From Neoconidiobolus thromboides FSU 785 (Eukaryota; Fungi; Entomophthoromycota), in NCBI GenBank assembly GCA_025603075.1, contig MU626322.1, positions 1 to 64,000 on the forward strand: DNA of 64,000 nt, read 5' to 3'. This document shows positions 40,304-64,000 of the stretch, in pieces (position 1 is the first letter of the stretch; the number at the start of each line of letters is the position of its first letter). Under the pieces are notes generated by a model, which worked only from the letters and a program-made list of their open reading frames with translations, ran no database searches and was not told where the DNA came from. The translations under genes and the position numbers were made by a program.

Positions 40304-42222
40304 TTACCCAATGATGTCCTTAATGGTCATTAGCAATACATTGTCAATTTCATAGTTTCCTAGATTCTCTTTAATAGATTTAACAGTATCGACTGAATCA
40401 AACCTCTCGTTTTTCAGTCTAGAGTTGCAGGCGCCCTTCAGCAATTTCAACAATTTAAGCATATACGCTTTAGCTTCAATGACAATTTCTTTCCCAAACC
40501 CCTGACTTAATAGCCATTCTTCTTCACTAATAAATGATAAATAGACATATATTACATACATAATAGAGGCATAATATGGAGCTTCATAATTGAACTGAAA
40601 CCCATCGTTAGTAGCTAAAGCACACCTAGCACATGCAAAAGCTCCACGATTCAAACCATGAGTTTGTTGAATATTATTCTGCTTCATTGTTAGATAGAAT
40701 TCAGTTACTGATTGAGCAGATTTGAACAAAAGTCTAGCTTCATCGATAGAAAACTGTTTAGGTTTTGGGACGACTAAAACAGAAGGATAGTATAGATAGA
40801 TTAATATTAGGTTAGTAAAGGCATTTAAATGATAGTTAAATACGTTGGATTCATAAAATTTCTGGATTGTTTTTGTATTTTGCATTTGTCCTTTTAGTTG
40901 TATTTTTTTCACTGCATCAGATAAAGACGGATTATATATTAATTGACTGGTTAAATTAGCCAACACAGTATTAAACTTCTCTTTTGGAAGCTGTAGTTCC
41001 TGGTGAGATACTTCATTTAATTTGTTCAATCTTAAATACTTCAATTTAATCTTTTGAACATGTGCTACAATTTCAATGAATGACTCTGTCACTACTTTTT
41101 CACCATATATCTTTTCAAGCCTACTATTTGAAAAAGTCGTCTTCATTTCCAAGCCATTTATCACACTAGTTCTGCCTAGTTGTAAACCATCTACATCAGC
41201 TTTTGGCAAGTTTATTTCTACTGGTTTAAAATTAAAACTAAGACTTGGCATATTTGGAAACAAAGTTAAAAAATGGTAATAAACCATTGATAGTGAGTTC
41301 CACAATTTTATCTTCCTTTCTTTTTTTCCCATGTCCTCCATAAAGCTCTCGTCTATACTCTTATTGTACTCCAAAATCCTCTTATCTTCTTCAATCCCCT
41401 CTTCTGTAATCTTATCATATCCTAACAACTGCGCCATCCTTACGGCTGAACTAAAATAACGTAATCCCATTACGGAATCTGATTTATATCCTGAAATAAA
41501 GCTCATAAATAGTAACCCAATCACATTATTAAAGGAGGGTTTTGCATATGCTTCTCTCAGTCCCTTCTTTGCTTTCTTTATATTTATTCTATAAATCTGC
41601 TGTGCTAGAACCCTATTATTTGAAGCTGTAAAATAAGCCAATAAAGCTAAAAATACATAAGAGGACATTTCAGAAGTATTTTTAGTTAATAAGGCGTTAA
41701 CTTCCTCAGGGGTGAACCACATTTGATATAAATCAATGTACTTTAAATAAATAGTTGTACTAGTTTGTAGGAAAGTGCCATAGCCAATGGTTGGTTGCTT
41801 CAATAAATTAATTGGCTCAACAATGTGGTTGAGGTTGGAGTTTCTGTTAATGTACATTAGGTCATGTTTATAACTATCTATTAATAATTCAATATGATCG
41901 TAGTCTTCAAATACAGATACTGTGCCTTGCTTTAGTTGACTTAATATCTTGACACACCAAGCCAAGTATCCTTAATTTTATATTTTAGTATTTTATTTTA
42001 AATGGTTTATCAAAGTGGTTATTTACTGTGATACATTGATAGCTCTGATGGACTCACTTTTTGTAAATGTCGCAATTGGGTTATTATAGAGCTTACATTT
42101 TGCTCTAAATTATCCATTTGATGCCGCTTTAAACCTATTCCACTGCGTAGTTTAGCTATGAGCCAATATTAGTATACATTGGTTCGAAAAATGGATGGCT
42201 TACTTTTTGGTGGAGTATTCAT
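40304..42222 (-). CDS. Fungal TF middle-homology-domain protein lacking Zn2Cys6 (about 604 aa, 3 exons)
   Basis: Exons 42222-42204, 42155-42027 and 41970-40304 splice in frame. AVRMAQLLGYD...KLWNSLSMVYY resembles the fungal_trans motifs. Confidence 0.85.
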
Positions 42223-42581
42223 GATGTTGGGTTTTAAGATAAATTAAACTAAAAAAGCTAAAAACTAGCATTATTTTTAACTACGATTGCTTAATTTTGT
42301 ACAGCTTGACTGCAATAATTACTATTTTATGCCTAATTTAAGTAAAATGCGACTAGTTTAGCAATGATTTTTATAATTAAAAAGCTTATTATAATTCTTT
42401 TGAAGCTTAATTATGGCTATATTTACTCTTAAATGAATAGTTTATTAGTTTATAGAAGAGATGAAATAATAGTAAACTATGTCCTTTTCTCTAGTTTATC
42501 TAGCAAAATAGCATAATTATTTCACCTCATAAAAATAAAAAATAAGTTCTTGACCTATTTAATTTAAAATTCAATTTCAAC

Positions 42582-44491
42582 ATGGATACAGTGCCAAAAA
42601 GTAAACAGTTTTATTATTATGATTGATGTATACTAACCTTCAATCCATAGTAAAACCACGTAGTAAAATGAATAAAAGGCATCATCGTGTGGATGCTTTA
42701 GAGCGTAATATAATGAAAACGATAGCCTGTTTACAACAACTCAAAACTGTTAGCCCATCTCACTTATCAGTATATCACAGTAAATAACCATATTAGAAAA
42801 ACTACTCAAAGAACTAAAACTATATTGAAGAATATTTAGCCTGGTGCGTCGAGATATTAATTGGACTACAACAAGAAACCTTATCAGTGGTCGAAGACTA
42901 CGATTACATTGAATTATTGATAGTCACTTATAAACAAGAACTGAATTTCCTCAACAACAATGACAACTTTTCACATATTATAGAACCAATTACTTTATCG
43001 AAGCAACCAACCACTGGATATGGTACTTTTTTACAAAACGGCACTACTATTTATTTAAAGTATATTGATTTATATAAAATGTGGTATACTTGCGAAGAAG
43101 TCAACGCTTTACTAATCAACTCTAAGCCTGGTATGCCTTCTTATGCCTTTTTAGCTTTATTGGCTTACTTCACAGGTTCGAACAATAGTACATTGACACA
43201 ATGGATTTATAAAAACAACTTGAAAAAAGCTAAAGAAGGTTTGGCAGAGGTTTATGCTAATCCATCATTTAATGGTGTAATTAGCTTACTCTTTTTGTGC
43301 TTTATTTCAGTTTATATACCAGATCCAGTAGGAAGTGCACGCTACTTTAGCTCAGCTGTAAGAATGGCACAAGCATTAGGGTACGATAAAATAGTAGAAG
43401 AGATGGAGGAAAGTGACAAAAAGAGGTTAAGACATGATAAAGAAAAGCAGGAGGCGAATAAGATAGAATCAGAGAAAAGGGGAAGGATTGTGAAATTATG
43501 GAACTCATTATCGTTGGTTTATTATTCTTTTCTGACAATGTTTCCAAATATGCTAAGCCTTGGCGCCAACTTTAAACCCATGGGAATCGAGTTGCCTGAT
43601 GTCAATAATAATTCGCAAATGCATAAAACTTATGAGCTGAATAGCTTGGAGATGGACACTATCTTTTTATCTAAAAACAATGAAAAAGTATATATTGAAA
43701 AGACAGTGACAGAGTCACTCACTGAAGTTGTATCACACATTCAAAAGGTTAAATTAAGCTATTCAAGATTAAATAAAATACACGAAATATCCGATTGCGA
43801 ATTACAATTACCAAAAGAAAAGTTTAACACAGTATTAACTAGTCTAACCAGCCAATTAATGTATAATCCATCTTTGTTTGAAACAGTAAAAAAAATGGAA
43901 TTAAAAAAACAAATAGAAAGTAAGAAAACGATACAACATTATTATGAATCAAATATCTTCAACTATCACTTAAATGCTTATACCCATTTAGTGTTAATAT
44001 ACTTATATTACCCTTCAGTACTAGTGTTTCCAAAACCAAAAAGATTTCCCATCAATGAAGCTCTAATCTTATATAAATCAGCTCAATTTGTGGCAGAGTT
44101 TTTTTTAACAATCAAACAAAATAATATTCAGCAGAAAAACAAAAGTCAAACCACTAGTAAAAGTAATTATAATGAACTAGCCATCAACAACGAATTTCAT
44201 TTTAATTATAAAGCTCCATATTATACTTCAACTATGTATGTAGTGTACGTTTATTTATCATTTATTAGTGAAGAAAGATGGTTGTTGAGCCAGGGGTTTG
44301 GTAAAAAGTTGATAGTTGAAGCAAAGGCTTATGTACTGAAATTATTAAAAATGTTGAAGGCTACCTGTGATTCTAAATTGAAAAGTGAAAGGTTAGATTC
44401 AAAGAGTACAATTCAATTTGTTAAAGAAAATTTGAGAAATTTTGAAATTGAGGATACATTATTATTATCTATCAATGAGATAATTAGCTAA
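42582..44491 (+). CDS. Fungal TF middle-homology-domain protein lacking Zn2Cys6 (about 602 aa, 3 exons)
   Basis: Exons 42582-42600, 42651-42779 and 42831-44491. Same intron positions as its paralogs. Confidence 0.85.
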
Positions 44492-45243
44492 AATGTAAAG
44501 AAATCGAGATGTTAACGAAATATTTATTTATTACTGTAAAAAAGGTATCATATTATTTATTTAATGTGTTCTTGAGGGGGGCGATTGGAAAGACGAGACT
44601 TATTTGCTATAAAATAAATTTTTTATTGAATAATCATTAGACCTATCAATCCGATTATTATACTATTGACTAAGAGATTGATATTCTAACAAATTTTAAA
44701 TTGAAAAATGCTAGTTGATTCTAAAAGCAAATACAATTAGCAGCTAATAGATTGGTAGTTTTATGTCAGTTTTAAAGGATGTTATTCATTTTTTCCTTAG
44801 TTTTTAAAAATTTGAAAAATATCTATTGAGTAAGATAAAAGGTTTATTACGTGTTTAACGAGTCTCTTTGATAAAATGACAATAGTTTAAAAATGGAATA
44901 GCAATTATATAATCTAATTTTTTAAAACTGTCATTTTACTTTATTCTGTGCTTTAGTTAATCAAAAGTACTTAATAATTTTGACCTTTATATAAATTGGC
45001 ATTTTTTTAATGAAAGTTGATTATATTTTTTTGAAACTCTTCAAAATGTGATGCTAAAACCTTTTTAAATTGTACACATTTTCCAATTTTTTGGGGAAGA
45101 TACTAAAATATCAGCTTTTATGCTCGTGTACATGATCTAATTAAAATAACTGAAAATAAAGTATAAAAGCAAATCAACTTTTGTACAGAAACAAAAACAA
45201 CTTCTTTATTTAGATATCAGGTTGTTATTACTGTTTTGGAAAA

Positions 45244-45492
45244 ATGAAACCAAACACCATTATTTACCATTTAGTTTTAATTACTGGAGTACTCTCTACT
45301 TGTAAAGTGTCTTATTTTCCCAGCCGTGGTATAAAGGAACAGAATTTTACCTGTAAAGTAAGCTGTACTAAAGTTATAACTGTCGCTTCTAACCCCAATG
45401 GTCTTATTTGCTCTTTAAATAATGATATGGTTATATGTTCTTGTGCCAATGATGGATGTGGTTCCTTGCCATCATCATTAAAATGTAAATAA
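45244..45492 (+). CDS. Small secreted cysteine-rich protein (82 aa)
   Basis: Signal peptide MKPNTIIYHLVLITGVLS and 8 Cys in the mature ~64 aa. Confidence 0.75.
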   Translation: MKPNTIIYHLVLITGVLSTCKVSYFPSRGIKEQNFTCKVSCTKVITVASNPNGLICSLNNDMVICSCANDGCGSLPSSLKCK

Positions 45493-46070
45493 GAGATGCA
45501 TTTATTAAATTATCATTTATAAAATTATTTTTTGGTTACTTGTTATATTTTTTATAACTAATATTTGATAAATTATTATTATTATTGTTAATTAGTTTGT
45601 TTAAGTTTGAAATATCATACCTATCAGTTAAGTGGGTTTATAAAAAAAATGTAAAAAGAATACTGTTAACAAGAATGACTGTAAAAATACTAAGATAACA
45701 ATTTAAAGAAACTAAGGAGGTATTAAGTAGAAAGTTAATGGCACATAGTACTATTTTTCTATCAAATTTAGACTTTAAAAAGAATTGAAGGCAAAAGATT
45801 TATAAATGAAGGTGATACTTTGAGGGAATGTTAATATAGATTTAATTTTGTCGTTTGAATTCAAAATAAGTTTTAATAGAAATGACATCAAAGGATCAAA
45901 AAACACGATTTAATACTTTTTTTTATAAATAGGATCAAAACTGACATCTGCTCTACTCAATCACCATACAAAAAAATTCGTTTATATAAGCTCTAACTCT
46001 AGATACTATTGATATATTAATATCTAAAAAAACAATACGCCTTAAACCAAACCTAGCTATCCCTTTTGAT

Positions 46071-46280
46071 CTAATACCTCTTCCCGATAGCTCTACTCAT
46101 TGCCATACTTTTAGGATATAAAAATCGAGTACCAATACCCAAACAAGCGATTAAATTAATAAACATACCCCAACCAAAGCCAGAAAGAAAAGGAAAAAGT
46201 AATTGATTAGTAATTATAGTGAGGATAGTGGAGCCTATGCTAGGGGCTACTGGTGGTGACTTATTTTTTTTGAGCTGCAT
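46071..46280 (-). CDS. Small membrane protein (69 aa), possibly Mim1/TOM13-like
   Basis: The hydrophobic segment NQLLFPFLSGFGWGMF loosely resembles Mim1 NLLLPFINGMMLGF. It sits as a compact ORF with its own AT-rich flanks. Confidence 0.45.
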   Translation of the reverse strand: MQLKKNKSPPVAPSIGSTILTIITNQLLFPFLSGFGWGMFINLIACLGIGTRFLYPKSMAMSRAIGKRY

Positions 46281-46784
46281 TTTCGTTTTAAGATTGAAAT
46301 TATAAAAAAATTAAAGATTAATTTTGAAAAATGGAAATTTTAGAAGCTATTTTTTTTGGTTAGCAATTAAAACGAAAATCAAAAGATCAAGTTTTATCTC
46401 TAAAAACTTAGTTATAAGTTTAAATATTAGTAGATATAGCTTTATGTAAATGTGTAAAAATGATATTATGAAATTCGTTTTAAGCAATGTATTTTCATGT
46501 ATATATAGTGTATTATTATTAATAGGATGCATCTAAAAGAACGATTAAAATATTAAATATTATTGTAATATCTTGGACTAAAATTTATACTCTGGGCTTT
46601 AATTTTCAATATGACAAATAACTGTTAATAATTAAATAAAAAGCAATCCATTATTTACATATAAAGAAACCTACTATATTTATTTTTTAAAACAACTCTT
46701 AAAAAATTCCGCATTCAAAAATTAAAAATTAAAGTATTCATCATATAACGTATTATTATCAAAAAATGTCTTTTACTTAATCAC

Positions 46785-47564
46785 CTATTGTCCCTTCCCT
46801 TTCTCTAATCCAGCAGGTGAATCTACCTTCTTGTTGATATCTTCAAATCCAACCGGTGGTGTTAATGTTTTCTTTGCTTTTTCACCAAGATAATGATAAT
46901 CTACAAATCGATAAGCTTGAGTTAATTGGGCTACTTCATTGGTGGCATGGCAAGCAAATAACAACATATTTCTTGGTTCGACCATCCATGCAAAACGCAT
47001 AAAGACAGCGGAGTAAAGGCAAAGGGCTAGAGAAATGGAGATAAATTAGTTATATTGGGCTGCCAACTTATTCTTAATCGAACAAAATAAAACAAAATAG
47101 AAATTAAAATTAAAAACAGCTAGTTTGGATAGGCTGATAGAGTTGATAGAGTTGATAGAGTTAATAAAGGGTTCAACAAATTCAACACTTACCTGTAGTC
47201 ATTTTACCAGAGATTAATTCTGGGTCTTTATTTAAATCATTCAAAGCAGCAATTGGAATACCCCAGTTAGCGACTAAAAAATAAAATTTAGTAAATAATT
47301 TATGTTATTGAGGATCATGGACTTACCAGGTCCCCAGAAATGCTATTTAAGGTTTTAAAAATAGAATAAAATAATAAGTTTATATTTTTTTATAAAAGAG
47401 TACATGTTCTACTTACAGTACTAAAGATAAAGATTAATTATCAATGAGAATGGATAACAATATTATTAATGGTTTATTTACCTGCATAGATACTCACGAA
47501 ATTCTTTGGATTTTACTTTAGTCATTAATCTTTGAGCTATCGAATTGCTGGCTGGTCCACTCAT
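46785..47564 (-). CDS. MPC1: Mitochondrial pyruvate carrier subunit 1, 5 exons
   Basis: Spliced product [27 protein letters not shown]...[30 protein letters not shown]. Confidence 0.95.
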
Positions 47565-47956
47565 TTTTTTAAGTTTTTTTATAAAAGAATAGAAATGAAA
47601 AATTGATAAGAGTTTTGAAGTTTATTTTTTTTGGTGCTTAATTTTGTCCCTGAAAAAATAAAGTGAATGAAATTAGAAAGTCAATATCAGAGTGAAAGGT
47701 AAGATAAAAGTAATAACGTAAGGATCATAAATTTATTATAAAGGCTGAATATATACTCTAATTATTAACTAAAGCCATTATCCAGTTTTACTATATCCCA
47801 CACTGAATTCAAGTTAACGTACCTTCTTTATCTATTGTAAATTCCTTCTAAGCCATAGCTAATCTCCAACCAATAAAAGCATCGACATTATTTAAAATGT
47901 CATTAACTTTTTTTGAAAAAGTGTCATAAGCTCCTTTTTTCAAAAGCAATCTTTAA

Positions 47957-50320
47957 ATGGCACGTAAAAACCCTCCCAGAAAAGCAAAGACTTCCAATAA
48001 TTATGTTTTTACTACCAACGAAGATGGGGAAGTCATTTTAGGAAAAAGTAAAGTGAATATTGAACAAGTGGATGGGGATGAGACTGTGGACGAGGCAACA
48101 CTAGAAGGGGAGACGGATGGAGTAGGTAAGGAGACTTGGGGATCAAATGAAAAAAAGTGTTAATATAATATATAGATAATGTGGATAGCGAACAAGAGTT
48201 AACTGTTGTCAAGAAAACTAGCAGAAAACCTAAAAAAGTTATTGTAAAGAAAAGTAAGTTTAGAGTTATTTATGTTATTTAATTAATATTTATATTTGAT
48301 CAACAGCTACTGTAACAGATAAAAAGAGCTCGATCAAGGATTATTTTACAAAGAAAACAAAAGATACTGTAGTCAGTTGCAAAGAAATTGTTAATGATGT
48401 AAAAGAAGAATTGATAGAATCGCAAATTATAACAGATGGGTGTATTCAAAAGGTAATATTGCTTTGAGCTTATTAGAATAAATAGATGTTAAATTAAAAT
48501 AAAGGAACAAGAATCCGATTCAGAAACTATTACAACTAAAAAAAGAAAGGGTAAAAAAGAGACAAATACAGAATCAAAAAGAGGCAAAAAACAAACTAGA
48601 AAGAGAGATGAAAGCAGCGAAGAAGAGTATATAGATAATGGAATAGAAAGTGAAGAAAAATATATAGATAATGACGAAGTAGCTGAAGATGAAATAGATA
48701 AAGAAGAAGCGATAGTTAAAAAGAAAACCACAATGAATAGTAAAAAAATTAAGAGTAATTTTCCAACTACTAAAAAGAATAAATTAAAACAAAAGATGCC
48801 AAAAACATTTGAACTTATTCAAAATAAAGAAGAAAGCGAGATAAGTGATCCTAAATTAGTCGACAGTATTTATTTTCGAAGAAGGGAATATGATGTTTTG
48901 GAAGTAAAAGAAGGAGAGTATGAGCAAATGTTTCAATCACATAATATTAAATTAAGAATCGAAGAAGAAAAGTATGAACTGAAATCATATGATGGTATGG
49001 AAGTTAATGGGTACAAAATATTTAATATTAATTTGAGTAGTTATTGGATTGATTTTGACTATAGCGGGCAGTATTTAGCAGTAGCAGGTAGTTCAAAAGA
49101 TAAGGGTAGTGAATTAAAGATGGAATTTAATTTTGATAATAAAAAAGGTTGGATCCAAATTTGGGACTTAAAGAAAATGAAGTTAATTATTAATATTCGG
49201 CATAATTTTAGTGTTTTGTTAAAGTTGAAGTGGTGGAATATCAATATGGATAAAATCAATATTGAAAATAGTATTAGTTTAGGTTGTTTGGTAGTTAATG
49301 GAGAAGATGGTAAAATAAGACTATTTGAAATACCAAAAATAAAAGAAGAAGAAGAAATTATGCATATTGAACTAACGGATGAGTCAAAAAATATTATAGG
49401 AATTTTAAAACACCCAGAAATTTTATATAATAATTTTGAACTGTTCAGTAATAACCTTTTAATAGCTATTAGTTTACAAGGGAATATTATCAATTATGAT
49501 TTAACAGACTGCATTTTAAATCAAAACAATATTAATAAAATACCAAAGTTTATTGCCCAACCTCATCATTCCCCAATCTCCTACATTACTTTATTATGCA
49601 ATAAATACCTATTCACATTTTCATACGATGGCAAAGCAATGATTCAATCACTTAATGATTATGAAAAGAAATTTAAATTACATACATCAAGAACAGCACC
49701 CAACAATGCTACTACTATTGTTTATGATAATCAACAGTATGTCTTATTTTCAGATCAACAAGGAGGTATAAAATGGCTACATTTTATGGATTTAGATTTA
49801 AGCTGTAAATTATATAAATGTAACACATATCCAAAATCACCAGCGGTTAAGTATTTAGCTAGTCAATATCATCATTTAACGGCCACAACTACATTTCAAG
49901 GCACGCTGGATTTGTTTATGTGTTGGGGTATGAATACTAGGGGAGATAGGGTAAGTCGAAGCTTTGATTTTTTAATAGTTAATTGATCTTATTTTTTAAT
50001 TTTGTTTTAGGCATTTTCAGAGGTAAGTATAGTGAAAGTGGAACAAGAAGACGAAAACGAAGAGTTACAGTTATCCTTATTAAAAGAGATACCTAAGGTA
50101 AAATGACATAGTTTTAATATTATTTATTTGTTTATTTATTTGTTAGGATTTATTAAAAAATGAAAAATATCATTTAAAATTATTAAAAAATACTCAACCC
50201 CATTTTTTAACTAAGTTATATTTTAATACTGTTATATGGTGTCAGAATAAAAATAAGCCATTTTTAGTTGCTACTACAACTAATAATGGTCTCTTGATAG
50301 TAAAGGATTTGAAAGAGTGA
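47957..50320 (+). CDS. TFIIIC WD40 subunit (Tfc6/GTF3C2-like), multi-exon
   Basis: Acidic/basic N-terminal low-complexity region, then WD40-like QYLAVAGS, WIQIWDL and LGCLVVNGEDGKIRLFEIP. The last exon, TVIWCQNKNKPFLVATTTNNGLLIV, ends with TGA at 50320. Confidence 0.7.
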
Positions 50321-50567
50321 AAATAAGAAATATATAATATATAGGTTTTATAGAACTTTTCAATTTAATTTATAAATAAGAAATTAAACATGTATAAATA
50401 AATTAAAGCTTAATATTGAATATTTTTTTGATATTTTACTAATTTTATAAATGAAAGATAAACAAAAAATAATACTTTTTTTAATTTGAACTTGAGTGTA
50501 TAAAATTATTAAATTGTATCAAAGCCAATCTAAAAAAAATTGTTAACAACTTTAGAACTTTATGATT

Positions 50568-51600
50568 TTATAGATTGAATACTCTATCATTATAATTATA
50601 GAATACTAAGAAAGCAAAAAATCGAAGAGAAATGTAGTATTCCAGCTTTAAATTAGAACTATGGAGGATAAAGGATTGAATCTTATTTTCTAAAACATGA
50701 ATATCTTTTGGTCTATCGCTTATACATTTAGAAAGTAAAGACTCTTTGTTATCATACAGTGTTAAACATTTAATATTATAATTGACCAAGTAAAATGATG
50801 AATAATTTTAATATGATCAATAAGTATGCTAATACCAATATGAAATTGCTCATTCGATATTCCTTCCTTGATCGTTTCAAATTTAAAGTTATTTTGGTGC
50901 TACAATTTAATAAAATTTTTAATGAATGAATAATTTCTGATACTTTTGAGTTGTTTATGTTTGATGAATTAATGTGCAATACACAGTCAAAAAGGTGCTT
51001 AAAGAACACACCACATTTGTAGCAATAGTTAGAATAAGTTAACAAGGTTATTTCAATTGCTAATTTAGCTGCTTTATTCTCACTTAATTTTAATATTGTA
51101 TTCTCCCTTTTCCATAAGTCGTGAGTATTAAATTGTAAGTTAATATAAGAGTCACCAATAGAAACTAAAAGTACTGCTACTGAATAACACTACTTTCTTT
51201 CGCTGTTATTTTTATAATCTAAGTGTAAACCTAATAACATGGGGATGTGTTTTTTTTGTTTAAGAATTTTACTATAATCTTTCCACTCAGATAGCGCTTA
51301 AAAAATGGAAAAATAATGAAACTAAAAAAAACAGTCTCATATGGAATAGCTATATAGATTAGAAAAGTAATAAGATAGAGTGCTAAGATACTTCCTTTTA
51401 ATTCATTTAATAACGTCATCATTAATTGAATAGCACTTAAAGTAATCTTTGATTGATTTGGTTTGAGATATTGCAGTAGTTTATCTTTCAAAAATGTTTT
51501 CAAATCTGACAACCTATTATTACAACCAATATGGTTTAAACCAACTAACATGATAGGGCAGATCAACATGTTATCTCTTCTTTTGTCTATAAATTGATTA
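50568..51600 (-). pseudogene. RNI-like/LRR (F-box family) pseudogene with a MITE insertion
   Basis: Broken frames with LRR-like patterns (SLKILLNCSTKITLNL, HSSNLKLEY) and a MITE at 51241. Confidence 0.45.
51241..51338. mobile_element. MITE family A copy
   Basis: GGGGATG...CAGTCTC, TSD ACAT/ATAT. Confidence 0.88.
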
Positions 51601-51623
51601 TAAGTAAATAATAGCAATAATAT

Positions 51624-51720
51624 GTGAGTGTTTTTTTGGCTTCACTACTTTTTCTATTTTTAAGCACTAATTGAGCAGAAAAATTATTAGTAAAATTCTT
51701 AAACACAAAAATACATCCCC
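51624..51720. mobile_element. MITE family A copy
   Basis: GTGAGTG...CATCCCC, TSD ATAT/ATAT. Confidence 0.88.
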
Positions 51721-51912
51721 ATATGTTTTGTTTTGTACTTTTACAGGATATGATCAATACAATAAGTAGCTATAAGAATATATAATTGCTTTTTGAATAT
51801 AGCCATGGCAACAAAATTACCTATGGTGTATTACTTACCAGCTTTTTTGTTTAAACCTAAGACTGAATTTTATTATATTTGATTCTTCAAATAGAACAGA
51901 ACATCAAAAAAT

Positions 51913-52008
51913 GGGGATGTTTTTTTGCGTTCAAGAATTTTACCAACAATTTTTCCATTCAAATAGTGCTTAAAAATAGAAAAGTAATGAAGCCAAAAAA
52001 ACACCCAC
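51913..52008. mobile_element. MITE family A copy
   Basis: GGGGATG...CACCCAC with an AAAT/AAAT TSD. Confidence 0.9.
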
Positions 52009-52394
52009 AAATATTGCTTTCATTTAACTTTAAGTAACACTATGAATTTCATTTAGAACTTAACTTTGAGTAGGATTTTAAACTTGCCCATATTATAAGC
52101 AAAGTTTTATCATTTTATGCTAATAACAATAAATTAATATTACAGAGCCTTTTAACTTATTGCGAATAATAAAAGTTTTAAAAAAAATTAAAAAAAGTTT
52201 TTATTTTAATATAATTATAATAATACGCCAGATGATATTAAATTTTTTTAGTAAAACAAAAATAGAAGAAAAAAGTATAAGCGGGAGAATGCCATGCTCA
52301 ACTCAGTACATTTTCTTATACTTTTTCAAACCTCAACATTATCCATAGTCTCCTCCCTTATTAGTTAAATAATTAATAAACTTCAGCTTTAAAT

Positions 52395-54446
52395 TCAGTT
52401 CCTCCTTTGGAATGAACTAGCGGTAGGCGACATTTCCGTAGGTGACATCGTTGCTCCTGTATTATCCATCTGCTCTGGCTCCTCATTTATGACTATGATA
52501 TTCTTTCCTCTAGCATATTTAGGATTTACTGCCCCATCTATTGAAAACTGTGACAATGGTCTACTTGGATTTGATTTGGACCTCAATCTTGTTCTAATAG
52601 TAGGATTAGATACTGTACGTATCAAATTTTTCATTAAAGAATTTGGACTATTTTCTTGCACTCTATTCCCAACTTCTTCCATGTCCCCAACACTACCTGA
52701 ATCCATTCCCACCGTTGAATTACTTGCTAATCCGCACCCAGGAGACAATCCAGGTAAAGCATCATTATTAAATTTAGTAATTGAAGGTTTTCTATATAAA
52801 CTTGAAGCTTCCAACTGCTCATCTGTAAACAAAGTTCGCTTTTTTAAATGATCGTCTTTTTCTGGGTGGATTAAGTTGCTCAATTTAACTAACATAGATT
52901 TTCCTGAATCCACTGTCATGGTAGAAGTTCGTGATGCTTGAGGTCGTATAGTACGTTGGATGTGAACTGGTAAGCTAGAATTTTTTGGATGTGGGGTAGG
53001 CATACGATTAGAATCTACTTTAATGCTTTCCGTACCTTCTAAATTTTCTGGTGAGGTTAATGTATAACTTGTATGTGTACTTGGATCATTTTCATTTCTT
53101 ATAATGTTTGCTGTTAAGTTACTGATTGTACCTGTTGGTCTAGAGGAATTGTTGCTATTATTATTGTTTTCTTCTATTTGACTTTCATTAATGTTGATTG
53201 CTTTTTCTTTCATTTCAGGTTCTTCTAAAGCTAATGTTTCATACATTCTAGAAGTTTGTAAAATAATAACTCCGCCACAGATGCAAAAGAAAGCTAAAAT
53301 AAGGGTAACAATAGAGATTGGAGAAGCGGCAAAGCCTTTATATAAGATAGCTGAGGATACAATCGTAGCTGTTGTAAATGTAACATAATACATTGGGGTG
53401 ATTTCTGCTGTTACAAACTCGTTTAATGCTTTATTTAAATAATTGATCTGTGTTATGATGGTCAATACTACAAATACTATCAGTAAATAAATAAACCAAT
53501 GTGTAAATTGATTATCTCCTGAAATTGAGGTAATGATGGCACTACCTACTGCTTGCAATGTAACTACAGATAATGAACCAATAAAAGAGCAGATAGAAAT
53601 GTAAATAATGGGATGTTTTTTGCCATATTTTGGGGCCATTCTATAAGCTAAAAATATAGATATTAGGATCACTAAAATAGTGTATGTTAAAAAGCCTAAA
53701 TTTTAAATATGTTAATGTCTTATTAAAAGTAAAATTTATAATTTAGTTTTACCCGGAGAAATAGCAAGCTCCATAAACTGGTCGATTTTACCAGGGGCAC
53801 TTTGCTCTGGTGCATGAAGTACTACAATTACGGATCCTAATAAACAAATGATACATCCAATTTTACCATGGAAATTAAGTCTTTCTTTCAAAAACACAGA
53901 AGATAGAACAGCACTAAAACAAGCCTTGTCATTCATTATTCATATTGTTAATATTTTATATCAATACCTAACAACTACACTTAAAGCACCTAATGGAGTA
54001 ACTAAAACAGCCGGTGCTAATATATAAGCTACAAAGTTGGTAACTTCACCTAAAGCCACTAATAAAAGGAGTAAGTATTTGGCTTGCAGTAATGATTTAT
54101 TAAATTACTTACTCAATATCATACCAGCCCACCACATGGTAGATTTTAGATAGCCATGACCGTCTTCTATTAATTAAAAGTATAAATATAGATGCTCAAA
54201 AAGTAATTATTTATAATCAAAACTTTATGATATAATGACAACCTACCTTCTCCTTCCACCCTTGAAGAGATTAATCCTTTTTTCTTTAAGATAAAACTTA
54301 TACCAATTAATAAGCCTAAGAGCAAATGAATTAGTAACTGAATGATTGATGTAGCTTTGACTTGAATTACCCGATAATACAGCTAAGATGATACCTACTG
54401 CACGATAGATTGGATCACCATTCACATCTATTTCAATACCTGCCAT
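52395..54446 (-). CDS. NIPA/DUF803 magnesium transporter, multi-exon
   Basis: GHGYLKSTMWWAGMI, NFVAYILAPAVLVTPLGALSV, LSSVFLKERLNFHGKIGC and IYISICSFIGSLSV, followed by a long disordered C-tail. Confidence 0.93.
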
Positions 54447-57070: not shown

Positions 57071-57153
57071 AGGGGTGTTTCTTTAGCTTCATCACTATTT
57101 CCATATTTTAAATGGAAAACTAGTAAAATTCTTAAATACAAAAATACATTCCC
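57071..57153. mobile_element. Internally deleted MITE A copy
   Basis: AGGGGTG...CATTCCC-ATAT. About 15 bp of the core is missing. Confidence 0.75.
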
Positions 57154-57238
57154 ATATCTTCTTTTTTTTCACTTTACTTACAATATAGAATAAAAAAGGT
57201 TTCTACCTGATATCAAAAGTAACGCGATGTCATGAAAT

Positions 57239-57330
57239 GGGGATGTTTTTTTTCATTACTTTCTCTTCTTTAAGTGTTATTTGAGGTGAAAGATTATTAA
57301 TAAAATTATCAAACAAAAAAATACATCCCC
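57239..57330. mobile_element. MITE family A copy
   Basis: GGGGATG...CATCCCC. The flanks AAAT/GTAT have diverged. Confidence 0.85.
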
Positions 57331-57808
57331 GTATCATGCATGGTATCATGATATTAAGTAGAAATTTTTTTACAAAAAACTAAAAAAATCCTTTCAAAAA
57401 TTCTATTAGTCTATTTACTTATTTGTATGACTTTTCCCTGCCTAAAATCTTGGGGGTCACTAAGTTTTAGATAAATATGAAGTTTATATATTGGTTAGCT
57501 AATTTTAATTATTATGCAATTTTTTAAAAGTTGGACTAAGAAATTTAGCATATATAGCTAGAGGTGTAACAATCATTTAAGAAAAACAAAATTGATTCAA
57601 TGCTATTACAAAAACTTTAACCAATGAAGACAAAATTAAACCAATCAAGTAACTAATTGATTTTATGAAATGAAATGTAAACTTAATTCATAATAATAAA
57701 GGTTATTTTTCAGGTTATTTCTTTATTATAATTAACTATAATTTTTGATTTGATTTTCAAAAATACTGTTTTTATATAAATAAATTATCAAATATGTTAA
57801 TCTCTTAT

Positions 57809-59719
57809 TTATCCAATAACATTATTGATAGATGTCAAGAACATTTTATCCACCACATAATTGTCCAAATTAATTTTGATAAACTCAATTGTACTCTCCG
57901 AGTCGCATCTTTCACTTTTCAATTTTGAGTCACAGGCAGCTTTCAATAATCTTAACAATTTGAGTACATAGCCTTTAGCTTCGAGGATAAATTTTTTACC
58001 GAATCCTTGATTTAGTAACCATTCTCCTTCACTAATAAAAGATAAACAAGCATAAATTATATACATAATGGAGTTATAATAAGGTCCATCGTATTTGACA
58101 TGAAACCCAGCATTGGTAGCCATAGCACATCTAGCACAAGCAAAAGCACCACGATTTTTTCCATGTGTTTGTTGAATGTTATATCGTTTCATTATTAAAA
58201 AAAATTCTGATAATGATTCGACCGATTTGTATAAGATCATAGCCTCATTAAGAGGGAATTTTTTGGGTTTCGGGATAACTAGGACAGAGGGATAATAAAG
58301 ATAAATCATTACTAAATGAGCATAAGCGTTTAAATGATATTTGAATGCGTTAGATTGATAATATTTTTGTATTCTTTTCATGTTCCTTACTTGATCATTT
58401 GACTCCATCCTTTTCACTGTGTCAGATATAGATTTGCTATATATCAATTGAGAGGTTAAATTGGTCAACGCTGTATTAAACTTTTCATTTGGTAATTGCA
58501 ACTCAGAATGAGGTATTTCATGTAGCTTATTCAACCTTGAATACTCCGACTTAACCTTTTGAATATGTGATACAATCTGCGTGAATGATTCGGTGACTAT
58601 TTTATCGCTATATATATTTTCAAACTTATTATCCGAAAAAATGCCGCTTATCTCCAAGTCAGTTGGTGAATACGAACTATTCAATTGTATACTATTTTTG
58701 GCACTTGATAGATTGATTTTTACTGGTTTAAAATTAGCATTAAAGCTTGGCATATTTGGAAACATTGTTAAAGAAGTATAATAAAATAATGATAATGAAT
58801 CCCATAAATTTGCAGCCCTTTTTTTTTCATTGAATTCAGTTTCAGGCTTTTTTACTCCTTTACCATACCACAATTTTCTTTTATCTTCCTCAGCCATCTC
58901 TTTTTCACTCTTATCATATCCCAGCAACTGTGCCATTCTTATAGCTAAACTAAAATATCGTGTGTATGATACTAAATCTGATTTATAAGCTGAAATAGAT
59001 GCTAAAAAAAACAAACCAATTACATTTTTAAAGGATGAGTTTGCATATGCTTCCGCCAAACATTCCTTTGCTTTTTTAAAGTTAATTTTATAAACTTGCT
59101 TTGTAAGCATACCATTATTCAAGCCTGTAAAACAGGCTAACAAAGCTAGAAAAGCATAGGAAGACATATCAGGCTCGGTATTAATTAATAGAGCATTGAC
59201 TTCATTACGGGTAAACCACATTTGATATATATCAATATATTTTAAATATATAGTAACTCCAGTTTGTAAAAAAGTATCATATCCTGTAGTTGGTTGTTTT
59301 AACAAGGTAATTGGCTTAATATAATATGTGATGACTTCTTGATTGTTGATGTTTGTTAGTTCATGCTTATAAGCGTCTATCAATAGCTCAATATAATCGT
59401 AGTCTTCATAAACGGATGCTGTGTCACGCTTTAACTGATCTAGTATTTGGACACACCAAGCTAGATATTCTAATTAGTAGTTAATAAGTTTATTATTTGT
59501 TTTTACAAAGGCGCTTATTTACTGTGATAGAATGACAACTGCGATAAATTCAAGGCATCTGGTTGTTGTAAACTAGCTATTGCCTTCTTTGTATTATATT
59601 CTAATTTATCCACGCGGCGCCGCCTCCAGTCCATATCGCTACGTAATTGTGCTGGTTATGAGGGTTAATATACATTAATTAAAGAAATAAGTGCATTTAC
59701 ATTTCGATATTGTATTCAT
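57809..59719 (-). CDS. Fungal TF middle-homology-domain protein lacking Zn2Cys6 (about 602 aa, 3 exons)
   Basis: Exons 59719-59701, 59651-59523 and 59469-57809. N-terminus MNTISKSQLRSDMDWRRRRVDKLE. Confidence 0.85.
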
Positions 59720-59854
59720 GATGAAGTTGGATTCTAAATAAACTAAAATGAGATATTGAAATTTTTGATTTTATTTTTTAAAATGCATTGTCAATTCATG
59801 CAATTTAAAAAGACACCTATCAAACTTAATAAAAATATAAGAATATGAGAACAT

Positions 59855-59953
59855 GGGAATATATTTTTGTATTGAAGAATTTTACTAACAATCTTTTCAC
59901 CCAAATAGCGCTTAAAAAATGAAAAAAAAGTACTGAAACCAAAGAAACACCCC
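59855..59953. mobile_element. MITE family A copy
   Basis: GGGAATA...CACCCC with the core AAATAGCGCTTAAAA. Flanks ACAT/ATAG. Confidence 0.85.
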
Positions 59954-60249
59954 ATAGTTTGATTTCAATTTAATTTGTCATAATTGTAAATCAAAAAATA
60001 TTAGCTTGAAATAAAACAGTCACACATACTTTAGATAAAATATATTCATGTATTATTAGTGACTTATAACAAGAAGCCTATGAAGTATAACCCATTGTAT
60101 TAAAACACTAACATGTCAATTTCGAGTTAGAAATGCCTCTCTGAAAATTCAAAATTTATGAGCCTTACTATTACAATTGACTAGATTATATTATAAACTA
60201 CTTGGGCATTTGAGCTTGAATTGTATCATAATTAAATTGAAACACTTTT

Positions 60250-61440
60250 TAAATAATTAAGTTGCGGCTATTACGGCCTTTTATGACTTTTTGAGGTAAT
60301 TTTTATAATAAGATTATTTGTATAATCGATTTGTATAGTCAATCCCTATTTTTAGGTTTAATATGCCATATTCTTTCTCCTTAAATGAGCAGTCCCTTAG
60401 GTCTAAAGAGCTACAACAGTTGTAATGTTTGTTTTTATTCTAAGTTTAGTTGAATTTTGTTTAATCATTGCTATCAGATTTTCATTTATAGTGATCATTA
60501 TTTTTTAAAATTGGCAACACGAAGTGGAAGCTAATTTTTTCTTACTTCGTGTTCTAGATAACCCATTAATATTGTTATCTTTTTGTCCACTCTTAATCAG
60601 TTGTTGTATTAATTTATATTATAATTTAACATATGTATTTTATTATATTATATTATTACTTATATCAAATTATATTTTTATGTATAAATACTAGCGACAA
60701 ATGTTAAAGAGGCAGAATCGTACTTTAGCGATATGACTAGCCTTGGCTTCTAGTTAAGATAAATACTATATTTTTTTCCTTTGGACTAATACCCAATAAT
60801 AAATGTCTATGTTCAAGAGAGGCCCTTCCAATTAAAAATATTACTTTGAAAAGCTCTCTTTCATATATTTATCAGCAAGAACTTTGAAACCTGTTATACT
60901 CATTTGAGATCTATTCATTAAGAGACACACAAGACCTAAATGACTTCTACTTCTTACTGGAAGCAAATACAATCAAAGGAGTGGATTTATTAATTTAATA
61001 TTGCAATTAAATTTCTTGAATTAAAAAAAATCAAATAAGCCATATCGAAATAAAAGCTGGATTTATATGATGCCTATTTATCCATCTTTTTTAGTTGTTT
61101 GATTATTAGTATAGAAGTGGTTTTTAGCCTGCTTTTATCATGAGTATCAAGATGCTTTATTTAATTATGCTAGGTATCAAAATTCTTTTATAAATTCTTT
61201 TGAAACGATATGAGAATATAGTTTTCCTCTCTTCATTTGATTAACTTATGAACTTTTATACACATTCAGCAATTGAAGTATTTAGATGCAAAATACATTA
61301 AAATATAAGCTGGGAGATACTAAGCTACTCTTGCTACTAGATCATATCCTTTGATTTAAAAATCCTCCCTTGTTAATAGTTCGGCAGCTAAGTTTAATTT
61401 ATGGTGGTTGAAGCATATGGCAACTTGATTTCGAAGTATT
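60250..61440 (-). mobile_element. Heavily decayed Ty3/gypsy-like pol relic (RNase H region)
   Basis: Broken frames give YERELFKVIF...RHLLLG (compare EKELLA...RHYLLG) at ~60790-60870 and KSGQKDNNINGLSR (compare PGKxNxxADALSR) at ~60550-60595. Confidence 0.35.
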
Positions 61441-61472
61441 AAGTTGCATTAAAAATAGTCGAAATAAATTAT

Positions 61473-61565
61473 GGGGGCGGTTTTTGATTTTATCGCTTTT
61501 TTATTTTTAAGCACTATGAATGGAAAGATTGTTAGTAAAATTCTTAAATAAAAAAATACATCCCT
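61473..61565. mobile_element. MITE family A copy
   Basis: GGGGGCG...CATCCCT, flanks TTAT/ATAT. Confidence 0.8.
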
Positions 61566-62471
61566 ATATTATAAAATAAAAATCCATAATAATTGAACTT
61601 GATTATTTAATTTGGCTTTTTGTTTATAAATTAATCTGCCATAATAATAGTACTTTATTTTTATAAAAATGATATTTTTCAGGAGTTCAAAGGAGGAATT
61701 GAAGATAGTTAAATGTACTTATTGAAGCTTGAACAATGAAATGAATGTGTTATAACTGGATTTAAAGGAACTTGCAATGAGGCTTTTCAAAGTATGATAA
61801 AGGAATTTTACAGTTATATCATAAGAAGTAGAAATAATAAGAGATATTTTATCTATTATTAATGTAATAAAAACAGGTATAAAATTTTAAATATGAGCTT
61901 TTTGACTTAAAAAAGTAGCTTTATTGAGAACAAAACAGTATACTTGGCTGCATTAGTCTCATAATAAAAGTTTTATGGTCTTGGTGAACATTTGCTAACC
62001 TATCGGAGTTGATACAAATCTCTTGATATTGCTTTACACAAAATATTTGTTTTTTAGTTATAAAAATAGTAATATACAAAGAAATAAATGTAATGGTCAC
62101 AAAGATAATATCTGAGACTGAAATACTATAATGGAAGTTTTTTATAAATTAGAACCAAAAATAATGTAATCCTTCTTGTGTTGTAATCAATCTATTAAAA
62201 TATTTGTAAAAATTGAAAAAACTAATGATAATAGAATCAGCTTTATTTAATGCGATACAAACTAACATAAAAACAAAAATATCTAAACAATTTTTAAAGC
62301 ATTTATACTTATAATAATTGTATAGTACAAGATGTTTTATCAAAAATATGAATTGATGTTATTTTTAAATATATTAGATATATTTTTTAGATTTAACTTT
62401 TGAGAATAAGTCTATTTAACTTGATACTTATTTAAAAAAATACCTATACTATTCAATACATCAAATAGTAT

Positions 62472-64000
62472 TCATGTAATAATGTCTTTAATAGACATCA
62501 ATATCATTTCATCTACTTCAAAACTATTTAAATTCTCTTTGATAGATTTGATTGTATTCTCCGAATCTAACTTTTCACTTTTCAATTTCGAGTCGCAGGC
62601 AGTTTTTAACAACCTCAGTAGTTTCAATACATAACCTTTAGCCTCAATCATAAACTTCTGTCCAAGCCCTTGGCTTAGAAGCCAGTCTTTCTCACTAATA
62701 AAAGCCAAATAAACATAAATTATATACATAAGCGGAGTATAATAAGGTGCATCATAATTTACCCGAAACCCATCGTTGCTAGCAAACTCGCATCTAGAAC
62801 AAGCAAAAGCACCACGATTCCTACCATGAGTTTGTTGAATGTTATTTCGCTTCATTATTAAAAAAAATTCTGCTACCGATTGAGCAGACTTGTATAAAAC
62901 TATAGCTTCATTGATATAAAACTTTTTAGGTCTTGGAAACACTAATAAGGAAGGGTAATAAAGGTATATTAGTATTAAGTTACAGAAAGCATTTAAGTGA
63001 TATTTAAATACATTGGATTTATAACATTGTTGGATTGCTTTCATATCTTTTACTTGTTGGTTTAGCTCGATCTTTTTTGTTATTTCAAATAGGGATGGAT
63101 TGTTTACCAATTGACTGGTTAAATTCGTTAACACAGTATTAAATTTTTCTTTAGGTAATTGTAATTCATGATGGGGTATTTCATAAACTTTGTCCAATCT
63201 TGAATAATTTAGTTTGATGTTTTGAACATGTGCTGTTATCTCAGCAAACGACTCAGCTGCTATTTTTTCACTGTGTACTTTTTCGAATTCATTATTTAAA
63301 AAAACACTGTTTATTTCCAAACCAATTGATGGATAAGAGCTATTCACTTCTAAACCATCTTGAATGTTTTTTGATAAATCGATTTTTACTGGTTTAAAGT
63401 TAACATTAAGCCTTGGCATATTTGGAAATATCGACAAAATAGTATAATAAACCAATGATAACGAATTCCATAACTCTATACCCCTTTTCCTTTTTTCGAA
63501 CTCTACCTCAATCTCCTCCACTCCTTTAACATATTCTGATTTCCTTTTATTTTCCTCAAGCATCTCCCTTACACTCTTATTGTACCCTAATAACTGTGCC
63601 ATCCTTATAGCTGAGCTAAAATACCGTAAGCTTACTACTGGTTCCGCTCTATACCCTGAAATAAAGCACATAAACAATATGCCAATCACATTGTCAAATG
63701 ATGGATTGGCATATGCTTCCACTAAGCACTCCTTTGCTTTTTTGAAATGAATTTTATAAATATGATGTCCTAATGTACTATTTTTCAAACATAAAAAATA
63801 AGCCAACAAAACCAATATAGCATGGGAAGACAGATTAGGTTCAGCGTTAGTCAATAAGGCGCTGAATTCTTTGCGAGTATACCACATTTGATATAAGTCA
63901 ATATATTTTAAATAAATCTTTAAACCAGATTGTAGAAAGGCTCCATAACCTGTGGCCGGTTGCTTTAGTAAGGTGTCTGGATTGACAAGGTAGACGATAT
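62472..64000 (-). CDS. Fifth MHD TF-like paralog, 5' end beyond the window
   Basis: The frame is open to the window edge and collinear with exon 3 of the paralogs (KQPATGYGAFLQ...AIRMAQLLGY...RGAFACSRC). Confidence 0.85.
   Translation of the reverse strand, partial: IVYLVNPDTLLKQPATGYGAFLQSGLKIYLKYIDLYQMWYTRKEFSALLTNAEPNLSSHAILVLLAYFLCLKNSTLGHHIYKIHFKKAKECLVEAYANPSFDNVIGILFMCFISGYRAEPVVSLRYFSSAIRMAQLLGYNKSVREMLEENKRKSEYVKGVEEIEVEFEKRKRGIELWNSLSLVYYTILSIFPNMPRLNVNFKPVKIDLSKNIQDGLEVNSSYPSIGLEINSVFLNNEFEKVHSEKIAAESFAEITAHVQNIKLNYSRLDKVYEIPHHELQLPKEKFNTVLTNLTSQLVNNPSLFEITKKIELNQQVKDMKAIQQCYKSNVFKYHLNAFCNLILIYLYYPSLLVFPRPKKFYINEAIVLYKSAQSVAEFFLIMKRNNIQQTHGRNRGAFACSRCEFASNDGFRVNYDAPYYTPLMYIIYVYLAFISEKDWLLSQGLGQKFMIEAKGYVLKLLRLLKTACDSKLKSEKLDSENTIKSIKENLNSFEVDEMILMSIKDIIT

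What the first reader, a model, noticed from the sequence alone, without database searches (positions are those of the whole stretch)
40304..64000. Locally expanded family of full-length fungal TF regulatory-domain proteins with no Zn2Cys6 DNA-binding domain
Seen: five collinear paralogs in mixed orientation. The three complete copies share a 19-nt exon 1, a 129-nt exon 2 and a ~1.66-kb exon 3. Their N-termini are a short basic patch plus a predicted coiled coil (for example RSKMNKRHHRVDALERNIMKTIACLQQL) with no Cys cluster. Established: the AxRMAQxLG...LW motif belongs to the fungal_trans/middle homology domain, which is normally attached to a GAL4-type cluster and can sense ligands (as in Pdr1). 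Many MHD-only database entries are mis-annotations that miss a 5' exon. That artefact is unlikely here because the conserved ATG context is visible and two copies are head-to-head only 359 bp apart. Inference: these may be DNA-binding-less modulators, such as heterodimer partners or dominant negatives (like Id proteins for bHLH factors), or stand-alone small-molecule sensors. This is the best candidate for an undescribed system in the window.
Basis: partly seen in the sequence, partly recalled or inferred. Interest (0 to 1): 0.78.

Follow-up and report, generated by a model that had tools for sequence, protein, structure and literature searches.

The report
Zinc-cluster-less fungal transcription-factor-like gene family
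This insect-pathogen relative (Neoconidiobolus thromboides) carries an expressed, conserved family of Gal4-type regulator proteins that lack exactly the zinc DNA-binding cluster but keep the dimerisation and regulatory parts, a well-supported case of a protein class whose very existence is disputed.

Summary
The window (Neoconidiobolus thromboides FSU 785, contig C65) has four paralogous genes: 40304-42222(-), 42582-44491(+), 57809-59719(-) and 62472->64000(-). A decayed copy lies at 38435-39713(+), and a sixth copy lies just past the window. The three complete copies have exons of 19 nt, 129 nt and about 1.65 kb.

Pfam does not recognise these proteins. Profile-profile comparison, reciprocal HMMs, a Cep3-like predicted fold and bridging Conidiobolus coronatus homologues place them in the fungal middle-homology-domain (CeGAL) superfamily.

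No Zn2Cys6 motif lies within 1.5-4 kb of any locus examined. Each start codon has an in-frame stop 5-22 codons upstream. Probable RNA contigs show both introns of one copy spliced as modelled and no coverage between the divergent pair. The N-terminus aligns with the linker and coiled coil that follow the zinc cluster in canonical factors.

The family is not local. It has about 35 intact loci genome-wide plus fragments, and relatives in C. coronatus and Entomophthora muscae. The cluster's duplicates are old (dS saturated) and under purifying selection (dN/dS 0.13-0.20).

Function is inferred only: dimerising regulators that do not bind DNA. A homodimer prediction passed its controls.

The scan noted the same family elsewhere in this genome (s1-250495, s1-255540).

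The parts
38435..39713 (+). Decayed family copy (pseudogene fragment), covering profile positions 128-530 only
   Evidence: four separate frame pieces with E from 7.5e-44 to 1.4e-5, interrupted by stops. The first 127 profile positions and the N-terminal exons are missing.
40304..41970 (-). Copy 1, exon 3 (MHD body, stop codon included)
   Evidence: E 7e-192 to the family profile. The acceptor at 41971/41970 is confirmed by the spliced contig joint 41969->42026, ends CT..AC on the + strand, in runs X1 and X3.
42027..42155 (-). Copy 1, exon 2 (129 nt; basic K-x-R-S linker and start of the coiled coil)
   Evidence: Sequence read. Contigs cover it. A contig in X3 runs on from 42155 into 9 letters that equal the 3' end of exon 1, so intron 1 is spliced.
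42204..42222 (-). Copy 1, exon 1 (19 nt, ATG at 42222)
   Evidence: an in-frame TAA lies 8 codons upstream of the ATG. The exon 1-exon 2 junction is seen in X3.
42223..42581 (.). 359-bp divergent intergenic region shared by copies 1 and 2
   Evidence: Contig depth is zero over 42314-42615 in all four runs. No Zn-cluster-like frame is present.
42582..42600 (+). Copy 2, exon 1 (19 nt)
   Evidence: matches the database model P0001. An in-frame TAA lies 13 codons upstream.
42651..42779 (+). Copy 2, exon 2 (129 nt)
   Evidence: Contig depth is low. One contig in X1 keeps intron 2 (42750-43179 contiguous), so splicing of this copy is not directly shown.
42840..44491 (+). Copy 2, exon 3 (MHD body)
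   Evidence: AF2 model pLDDT 74, pTM 0.71.
57809..59460 (-). Copy 3, exon 3
   Evidence: E 5e-192.
59523..59651 (-). Copy 3, exon 2 (129 nt)
   Evidence: The database fragment P0017 begins with this spliced N-terminus.
59701..59719 (-). Copy 3, exon 1 (19 nt)
   Evidence: an in-frame TAA lies 18 codons upstream.
62472..64000 (-). Copy 4, exon 3, cut by the window end. The gene continues to an ATG at C65:64382 with the same 19-nt and 129-nt exons.

Best explanation
These are real, expressed, selectively maintained genes. They encode derivatives of the Gal4/Cep3-type (CeGAL) fungal transcription-factor family in which exactly the Zn2Cys6 cluster has been lost. A 6-residue exon 1 replaces the cluster. 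The protein then begins with the basic K-x-R-S linker and the coiled coil that follow the cluster in canonical factors, followed by a full but very divergent middle homology domain (MHD). This architecture is shown here, and I rate it about 0.9. It is an old lineage shared by Neoconidiobolus, Conidiobolus and Entomophthora. In this genome it has expanded to about 35 intact loci in several tandem clusters, and the window holds one of them. The rest is inferred. Because they keep both dimerising parts (coiled coil and MHD) but have no DNA-reading module, they most likely act in the nucleus as dimers that cannot read CGG sites themselves. They would modulate or be recruited by DNA-binding factors, in particular the roughly 117 Zn-cluster loci of the same genome, either as inactive heterodimer partners or as tethered co-regulators.
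For: MHD homology. The family profile against this genome's own Zn2Cys6-MHD factors gives hhalign probability 96.8%, E 2.7e-10, over P0001 residues 115-295, which include the RMAQxLG motif. The reverse HMM hits every window copy at E 5e-8 to 3.5e-6. The family profile hits a bona fide Zn-cluster factor at C19:25779 (E 4.7e-5) and canonical Zn2Cys6 factors of other fungi in the 1.84-billion-protein search. The C. coronatus homologue P0019 (family E 1e-29) and P0039 pass PF04082's gathering score and have no Zn cluster.

Fold. The top 10 VIA-align rows are all Cep3/CBF3 core, Z 10.3-12.0, about 340 residues aligned over model 105-590. Cep3 holds seven of the first eight Foldseek rows (rank 1 E 8.6e-03; probability 0.95-1.00). 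The top three Atlas rows are Fungal_trans/Zn(2)-C6 clusters, TM 0.47-0.60.

No zinc cluster. None of the 121 PF00172 six-frame matches lies in any family gene, and the only one on this contig is at 24.1 kb. A CX2CX6C... regex finds nothing in any frame of 30 family loci with 1.5-kb flanks, against 9 of 10 positive controls. It also finds nothing in the long open frames of the ten further stretches fetched or within 4 kb of the C. coronatus and E. muscae loci. An in-frame TAA lies 5-22 codons before every ATG of the C65 copies.

Transcripts. Contigs in X1 and X3 have intron 2 of copy 1 removed, and a contig in X3 joins exon 2 to the end of exon 1. Depth is high over the gene bodies and zero over 42314-42615.

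Linker homology. The family N-termini align with the K-R-G-P-x-x-G/S-Y-I-E-x-L-E stretch that follows the last Cys of canonical factors, with the same spacing from R-S to L-E.

Selection. dN/dS is 0.13-0.20 among the five intact C65 copies.

Dimer. The MHD (105-599) homodimer scores ipSAE 0.35 against a best control of 0.00. That mark was reached by 21 of 30 proteins solved as pairs and 0 of 23 solved as single chains. The runs agree in at least 63% of contacts and the partner pLDDT is 63.

Literature. The MHR of PnPf2 mediates homodimerisation and partner binding (bioRxiv 10.64898/2025.12.09.693112, abstract).
Against: No functional data exist. Nuclear localisation, heterodimerisation and any effect on transcription are untested. 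Pfam PF04082 does not reach threshold on the window proteins themselves. The structural Z of 10-12 is only a little above unrelated helical repeats (TPR Z 9.8). The runs are labelled RNA only as a guess, they are contigs rather than reads, and some contigs retain introns, so 5' ends are not mapped and only copy 1 has direct splice support. The dimer pass may reflect memory of the solved Cep3 dimer, and the eukaryote calibration is weaker. The linker alignment is short and not statistically scored.
Confidence: 0.55

Rival explanations
1. They are tethered co-regulators or signal sensors that do not pair with Zn-cluster factors. Other DNA-binding proteins would recruit them, or small ligands would bind the MHD. 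This is comparable to Dal81 and TamA, whose own zinc cluster is dispensable (from my own knowledge, not checked here).
For: The full-length MHD is retained under purifying selection. The MHD is a protein-interaction module in PnPf2. The predicted homodimer interface lies in the MHD, at helices 375-391 and 453-463, not in the coiled coil.
Against: Nothing separates this from the heterodimer model. No ligand pocket or partner was examined. Retention of the Gal4-type linker and coiled coil suggests pairing within the family class.
Confidence: 0.2
2. They have a non-transcriptional role: a helical scaffold derived from a transcription factor, much as Cep3 serves the kinetochore, possibly outside the nucleus.
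For: The only solved relative is a structural kinetochore subunit. The sequences are so divergent that Pfam misses them.
Against: Cep3 still uses its zinc cluster. A conserved basic N-terminal patch and the Gal4-type linker are kept across three genera. About 35 paralogues fit a regulatory family better than a single-copy structural role.
Confidence: 0.12
3. The basic patch plus coiled coil is itself a bZIP-like DNA-binding module, so these are still sequence-specific factors with a replaced DNA-binding domain.
For: Every member with a known N-terminus starts with a Lys/Arg-rich stretch directly followed by a predicted long helix.
Against: No bZIP or other DNA-binding Pfam family matches at E<=5. 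The basic stretch aligns with the canonical post-cluster linker, not with a bZIP basic region. The helix has low model confidence (pLDDT 50-62).
Confidence: 0.08
4. It is an annotation artefact: a Zn2Cys6 exon exists but was missed, as in more than 90% of database MHD-only entries (PMC10141177).
For: The base rate from the CeGAL study. The 5' ends are not mapped by raw reads here.
Against: No Zn-like frame lies near any of 30 family loci with their flanks, in the long open frames of the further stretches fetched, or within 4 kb of three loci in two other species. In-frame stops lie upstream of the ATGs. The exon 1-exon 2 junction is seen in a contig. The 359-bp gap to a divergent gene has zero transcript coverage. 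Several distant members and the three loci checked in other genera have their N-terminus in one uninterrupted frame.
Confidence: 0.03

Closest known systems
CeGAL family (Zn2C6-MHD fungal transcription factors such as Gal4 and Cep3; Pfam PF00172 + PF04082)
   Same: Homologous MHD by profile-profile and reciprocal HMM comparison. Cep3-like all-helical fold over about 490 residues. A post-cluster basic linker plus coiled coil in the same position and spacing. Total length of about 600 aa.
   Different: The Zn2Cys6 cluster is absent and is replaced by a 6-residue exon. The MHD is too divergent for PF04082's threshold. The family is confined, as far as the searches reached, to Entomophthoromycotina.
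Database 'MHD-only' proteins (PMC10141177)
   Same: An MHD with no annotated DNA-binding domain.
   Different: More than 90% of those entries were shown to be gene-model errors with a Zn cluster within 1 kb upstream. Here, six-frame scans, upstream stops, spliced contigs and conservation of the architecture in three genera argue against that error. The window proteins carry no Pfam Fungal_trans assignment, so a domain-based census may miss them.
Cep3 (CBF3 kinetochore subunit; PDB 2QUQ, 2VEQ, 6P7V)
   Same: Best structural match (Z 10.3-12.0). It is a homodimer, and a symmetric homodimer is predicted here too.
   Different: Sequence identity is 6-10%. Cep3 keeps its Zn cluster and is single-copy. 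I did not compare the predicted interface with Cep3's.
Id-type HLH proteins (dimerisation-competent, DNA-binding-deficient paralogues)
   Same: By analogy only: the dimerisation parts are kept and the DNA-contacting part is lost.
   Different: They are unrelated in fold. The proteins here are full-length and keep the large regulatory domain. No heterodimer has been shown.

Membership tests
CeGAL / Fungal_trans (MHD) superfamily | Sequence homology to the middle homology domain (PF04082) | tested here: met
   Direct Pfam scan is below threshold (no hit at E<=1 for the four window frames; 14.5 and 18.9 bits for P0003 and L009). Homology is met by hhalign against this genome's own MHD factors (probability 96.8%, E 2.7e-10), by the reverse HMM (E 5e-8 to 3.5e-6), and by bridging homologues P0019, P0039 and P0033 that exceed PF04082's gathering score.
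CeGAL / Fungal_trans (MHD) superfamily | Cep3-like all-helical MHD fold | tested here: met
   AF2 model pLDDT 74, pTM 0.71. The top 10 VIA-align rows are all Cep3, Z 10.3-12.0, 323-347 residues aligned. Atlas top rows are Fungal_trans clusters, TM 0.47-0.60. The margin over TPR proteins is small (Z 9.8).
CeGAL / Fungal_trans (MHD) superfamily | N-terminal Zn2Cys6 binuclear cluster (CX2CX6CX5-16CX2CX6-8C, PF00172) forming the Zn2C6-MHD pair | tested here: not met
   No PF00172 six-frame match lies in or beside any family gene. The regex is negative in all frames of 30 family loci with flanks and of three loci in other species, and in the long open frames of ten further stretches; the positive control scored 9 of 10. 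Upstream in-frame stops are present.
CeGAL / Fungal_trans (MHD) superfamily | Basic linker and coiled-coil dimerisation element following the cluster | tested here: met
   Alignment A3 places the family K-x-R-S...L-E stretch on the canonical K-R-G-P-x-x-G/S-Y-I-E-x-L-E stretch with equal spacing. A helix at 12-36 is predicted. The stretch is short, and the alignment is qualitative.
CeGAL / Fungal_trans (MHD) superfamily | Sequence-specific binding to CGG-type sites and transcriptional activity | not testable with these tools
   Needs EMSA, DAP-seq or ChIP, and reporter assays.
Genuine MHD-only proteins | Transcript evidence that the mRNA begins without a DNA-binding-domain exon | tested here: inconclusive
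   Both introns of copy 1 are spliced as modelled, and the 359-bp gap has no coverage. However, the data are contigs from runs labelled RNA only as a guess. The 5' ends are not mapped, and the other copies were not examined.
bZIP factors | bZIP basic region and leucine zipper (PF00170 and relatives) | tested here: not met
   No bZIP family matches at E<=5 in ten full-length members.
Id-like dominant-negative partners | Heterodimerisation with DNA-binding paralogues that blocks their DNA binding | not tested
   Only the MHD homodimer was predicted (ipSAE 0.35 against a best control of 0.00).

The most novel reading that the evidence does not exclude
Entomophthoromycotina carry an ancient, expanded clade of CeGAL proteins that function without any DNA-binding domain. 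They would form a second, Id-like or co-regulator layer over the zinc-cluster network. This would be the first well-supported natural demonstration that the fungal middle homology domain acts on its own.
Probability: 0.35. Interest if true: 0.65.

Novelty: new variant of a known kind. Interest (0 to 1): 0.5.

Why it matters
The CeGAL study (PMC10141177) concluded that more than 90% of MHD-only entries are annotation errors. [quoted passage not shown] Here the absence of the zinc cluster is backed by several lines of evidence: six-frame scans, upstream stops, spliced transcripts, purifying selection, and conservation of the same truncated architecture in three genera. The loss falls exactly at the domain boundary.

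That gives a concrete natural system for asking what the MHD does without DNA binding. It also shows that domain-based transcription-factor censuses can miss such proteins, because Pfam does not recognise them. The organisms are non-model relatives of insect pathogens and no function is known, so the significance is moderate.

Tried and rejected
- Pfam scans of the window frames and of ten full-length members gave no PF04082 hit at threshold and no DNA-binding family.
- A profile search of PDB sequences gave nothing (E 3.1 to a designed coiled coil).
- The word-index protein search, with a single sequence and with the alignment, returned only three proteins of this contig. It said nothing about other species.
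- I looked for a family copy at 50568-51723, suggested by another note. The family profile finds nothing there (E>4). The canonical MHD profile gives only weak collinear matches (E 0.066 and 0.28).
- The idea of a recent local expansion is rejected. The C65 copies are 53-62% identical with saturated dS, and the family spans many contigs and other genera.
- I considered positive selection, but pairwise dN/dS is 0.13-0.20. Site models were not run.
- The bZIP reading found no support.
- A literature search for a description of this family in Conidiobolus found none.
Their exons were searched by reference, and the full-length analyses used the stored database protein P0001, which equals the spliced model of copy 2.
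Full report
**What is there.** The window is 26% GC. It belongs to contig C65 of Neoconidiobolus thromboides FSU 785.

tblastn and a family HMM locate the paralogues at:
- 38435-39713 (+), decayed: four frame pieces with stops, covering profile positions 128-530 only
- 40304-42222 (-)
- 42582-44491 (+)
- 57809-59719 (-)
- 62472 to beyond 64000 (-)

A sixth copy (P0003) lies at C65:65467-67372. The three complete window copies have a 19-nt exon 1, a 129-nt exon 2 and an exon 3 of 1667, 1652 and 1652 nt. All introns are GT..AG and 48-62 nt long. Copies 4 and 5 repeat this structure. The head-to-head ATGs are 359 bp apart.

Only four copies lie inside 40304-64000, and the fifth is the decayed copy just upstream.

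**Is it an MHD?** Pfam does not hit PF04082 on the window proteins. Two relatives reach only 14.5 and 18.9 bits. Even so, four lines of evidence agree:
- A 20-member family alignment (A1) matches an alignment of this genome's own Zn2Cys6-Fungal_trans factors (A2) with hhalign probability 96.8%, E 2.7e-10. The match covers P0001 residues 115-295, the region holding the RMAQxLG motif.
- The reverse HMM hits all window copies at E 5e-8 to 3.5e-6.
- The family profile hits a bona fide Zn-cluster factor in this genome. In an exhaustive search of 1.84 billion representatives, it also hits canonical Zn2Cys6 factors of other fungi at its weak end.
- The C. coronatus homologues P0019, P0039 and P0033 exceed PF04082's gathering score.

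The AF2 model (pLDDT 74, pTM 0.71) has Cep3 as its best solved match. Cep3 holds seven of the first eight Foldseek rows (rank 1 E 8.6e-03; probability 0.95-1.00). The top 10 VIA-align rows are all Cep3, with Z 10.3-12.0 and about 340 residues aligned across model 105-590. The top three Atlas rows are Fungal_trans/Zn(2)-C6 clusters. The structural margin over TPR repeats is small (Z 9.8), so the fold evidence supports the sequence evidence rather than standing alone.

**Is the zinc cluster really absent?**
- A six-frame PF00172 scan of the whole genome gives 121 matches, 117 of them over the family cut-off. None lies in a family gene, and the only one on this contig is at 24.1 kb.
- A CX2CX6C... 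regex finds nothing in any frame of 30 family loci with 1.5-kb flanks. The same regex finds 9 of 10 canonical controls.
- More distant members with single open frames of 594-653 aa (C165, C23, C41, C202, C91, C196) also lack it. They also begin with a basic patch followed by a helix.
- An in-frame TAA lies 5-22 codons upstream of the ATG in all five intact C65 copies.
- Contigs from four public runs were laid on 40200-44700. The runs are labelled RNA only as a guess. In X1 and X3, intron 2 of copy 1 is removed (joint 41969->42026, GT..AG on the minus strand). In X3, a contig continues from 42155 into nine letters that equal the end of exon 1, so intron 1 is spliced too. Depth is 20-70 over gene bodies and zero over 42314-42615.

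Some caveats apply to the contig evidence. Some contigs retain introns, only copy 1 has direct splice evidence, and 5' ends are not mapped.

**What the N-terminus is.** I aligned N-termini of database models from three genera with the segment after the last Cys of canonical factors. The family's K-x-R-S...L-E stretch falls on the canonical K-R-G-P-x-x-G/S-Y-I-E-x-L-E linker and coiled coil, with identical spacing. The loss is therefore a clean removal of the cluster alone. This is a short, qualitative alignment.

**Extent and age.**
- The family profile finds about 24 core and about 12 distant intact loci, plus at least 10 decayed or truncated pieces. They lie in clusters on C8, C70, C65, C165, C170 and C159.
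- The C65 copies are 53-62% identical to each other and at most 32% identical to the other loci.
- dS is saturated (1.3-2.4) and dN/dS is 0.13-0.20. The duplicates are old and constrained, not a recent burst.
- Only 52 of 1.84 billion representatives match at E<=0.001. Of ten hits looked up by name, four are N. thromboides, three C. coronatus, one E. muscae and two unnamed.
- The C. coronatus and E. muscae loci are intronless at the 5' end, have upstream stops, and have no Zn-like frame within 4 kb. E. muscae P0058 starts with the same K-P-R-S...L-E motif.

**Mechanism.** What is shown is the architecture, expression, constraint and conservation. What is inferred is that these proteins dimerise but cannot read DNA. 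A homodimer prediction for the MHD (105-599) scored ipSAE 0.35 against a best control of 0.00. That mark was reached by 21 of 30 proteins solved as pairs and 0 of 23 solved as single chains. The runs agree in at least 63% of contacts, and the partner pLDDT is 63. The predicted interface is symmetric, at helices 375-391 and 453-463. This pass may come from memory of the solved Cep3 dimer. A preprint reports that the MHR of PnPf2 drives homodimerisation and partner binding.

I consider modulation of, or recruitment by, DNA-binding factors the most likely role. The rivals are a tethered co-regulator or sensor, a non-transcriptional scaffold, a bZIP-like replacement DNA-binding domain, and a missed exon.

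**Comparison with what is known.** The CeGAL paper holds that the Zn2C6-MHD pair is canonical and that MHD-only proteins are exceptional and mostly artefacts. This family fails the defining Zn2C6 feature while meeting the MHD, fold and linker features. I therefore file it as a variant derived from CeGAL, not as a member of the canonical pair. No paper describing it was found.

Noticed in passing
window 23476-24333 (-): An open frame with a Zn_clus match (PF00172, 32.9 bits at 24067-24174) and partial similarity to the canonical MHD profile (E 7e-9). It is a short or fragmentary canonical zinc-cluster gene 14 kb upstream of the cluster and is not part of the family.
   Followed up: partly
window 50779-51641 (-): Two weak, collinear matches to the canonical MHD profile (E 0.066 and 0.28), with no match to the Zn-less family profile. 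This may be the decayed MHR-type gene that another note describes. It is not significant on its own.
   Followed up: partly
window 40619-40648, 58124-58165 and the equivalent places in copies 4 and 5: An R-G-A-F-A-C-x-R-C loop with a CxxC pair is shared by four of the five C65 copies and is replaced in copy 2. It falls in a low-confidence loop of the model (residues 481-504) and is not conserved in the wider family.
   Followed up: partly
window 41755 / 43037: Contigs in X1 and X3 join copy 1 and copy 2 on opposite strands at roughly homologous positions. This is probably an assembly chimera between paralogues, not a real rearrangement.
   Followed up: no
window 40200-44700, runs X1, X3, X4: About a third of the laid contigs are only 90-95% identical to the window and another third are 95-99% identical. 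This suggests a different strain or divergent haplotypes of the same genes in those samples.
   Followed up: no
window 42750-43179: A contig in X1 runs unbroken through intron 2 of copy 2. This is either intron retention or DNA carry-over in that run.
   Followed up: no
L045 (C202:32000-35072) and L046 (C41:1-3500): A contig end and a contig start carry family open frames whose first 110 residues are the same (620 and 615 aa). This is probably an assembly overlap or a haplotig, so locus counts are slightly inflated.
   Followed up: no
window 48733-49986 (+) and 52395-53672 (-): Unrelated genes separate the two halves of the cluster. By eye (no tool run on them) one resembles a WD40-like protein and the other a membrane protein with a long Ser/Asn-rich tail. 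So the cluster is interrupted rather than strictly tandem.
   Followed up: no
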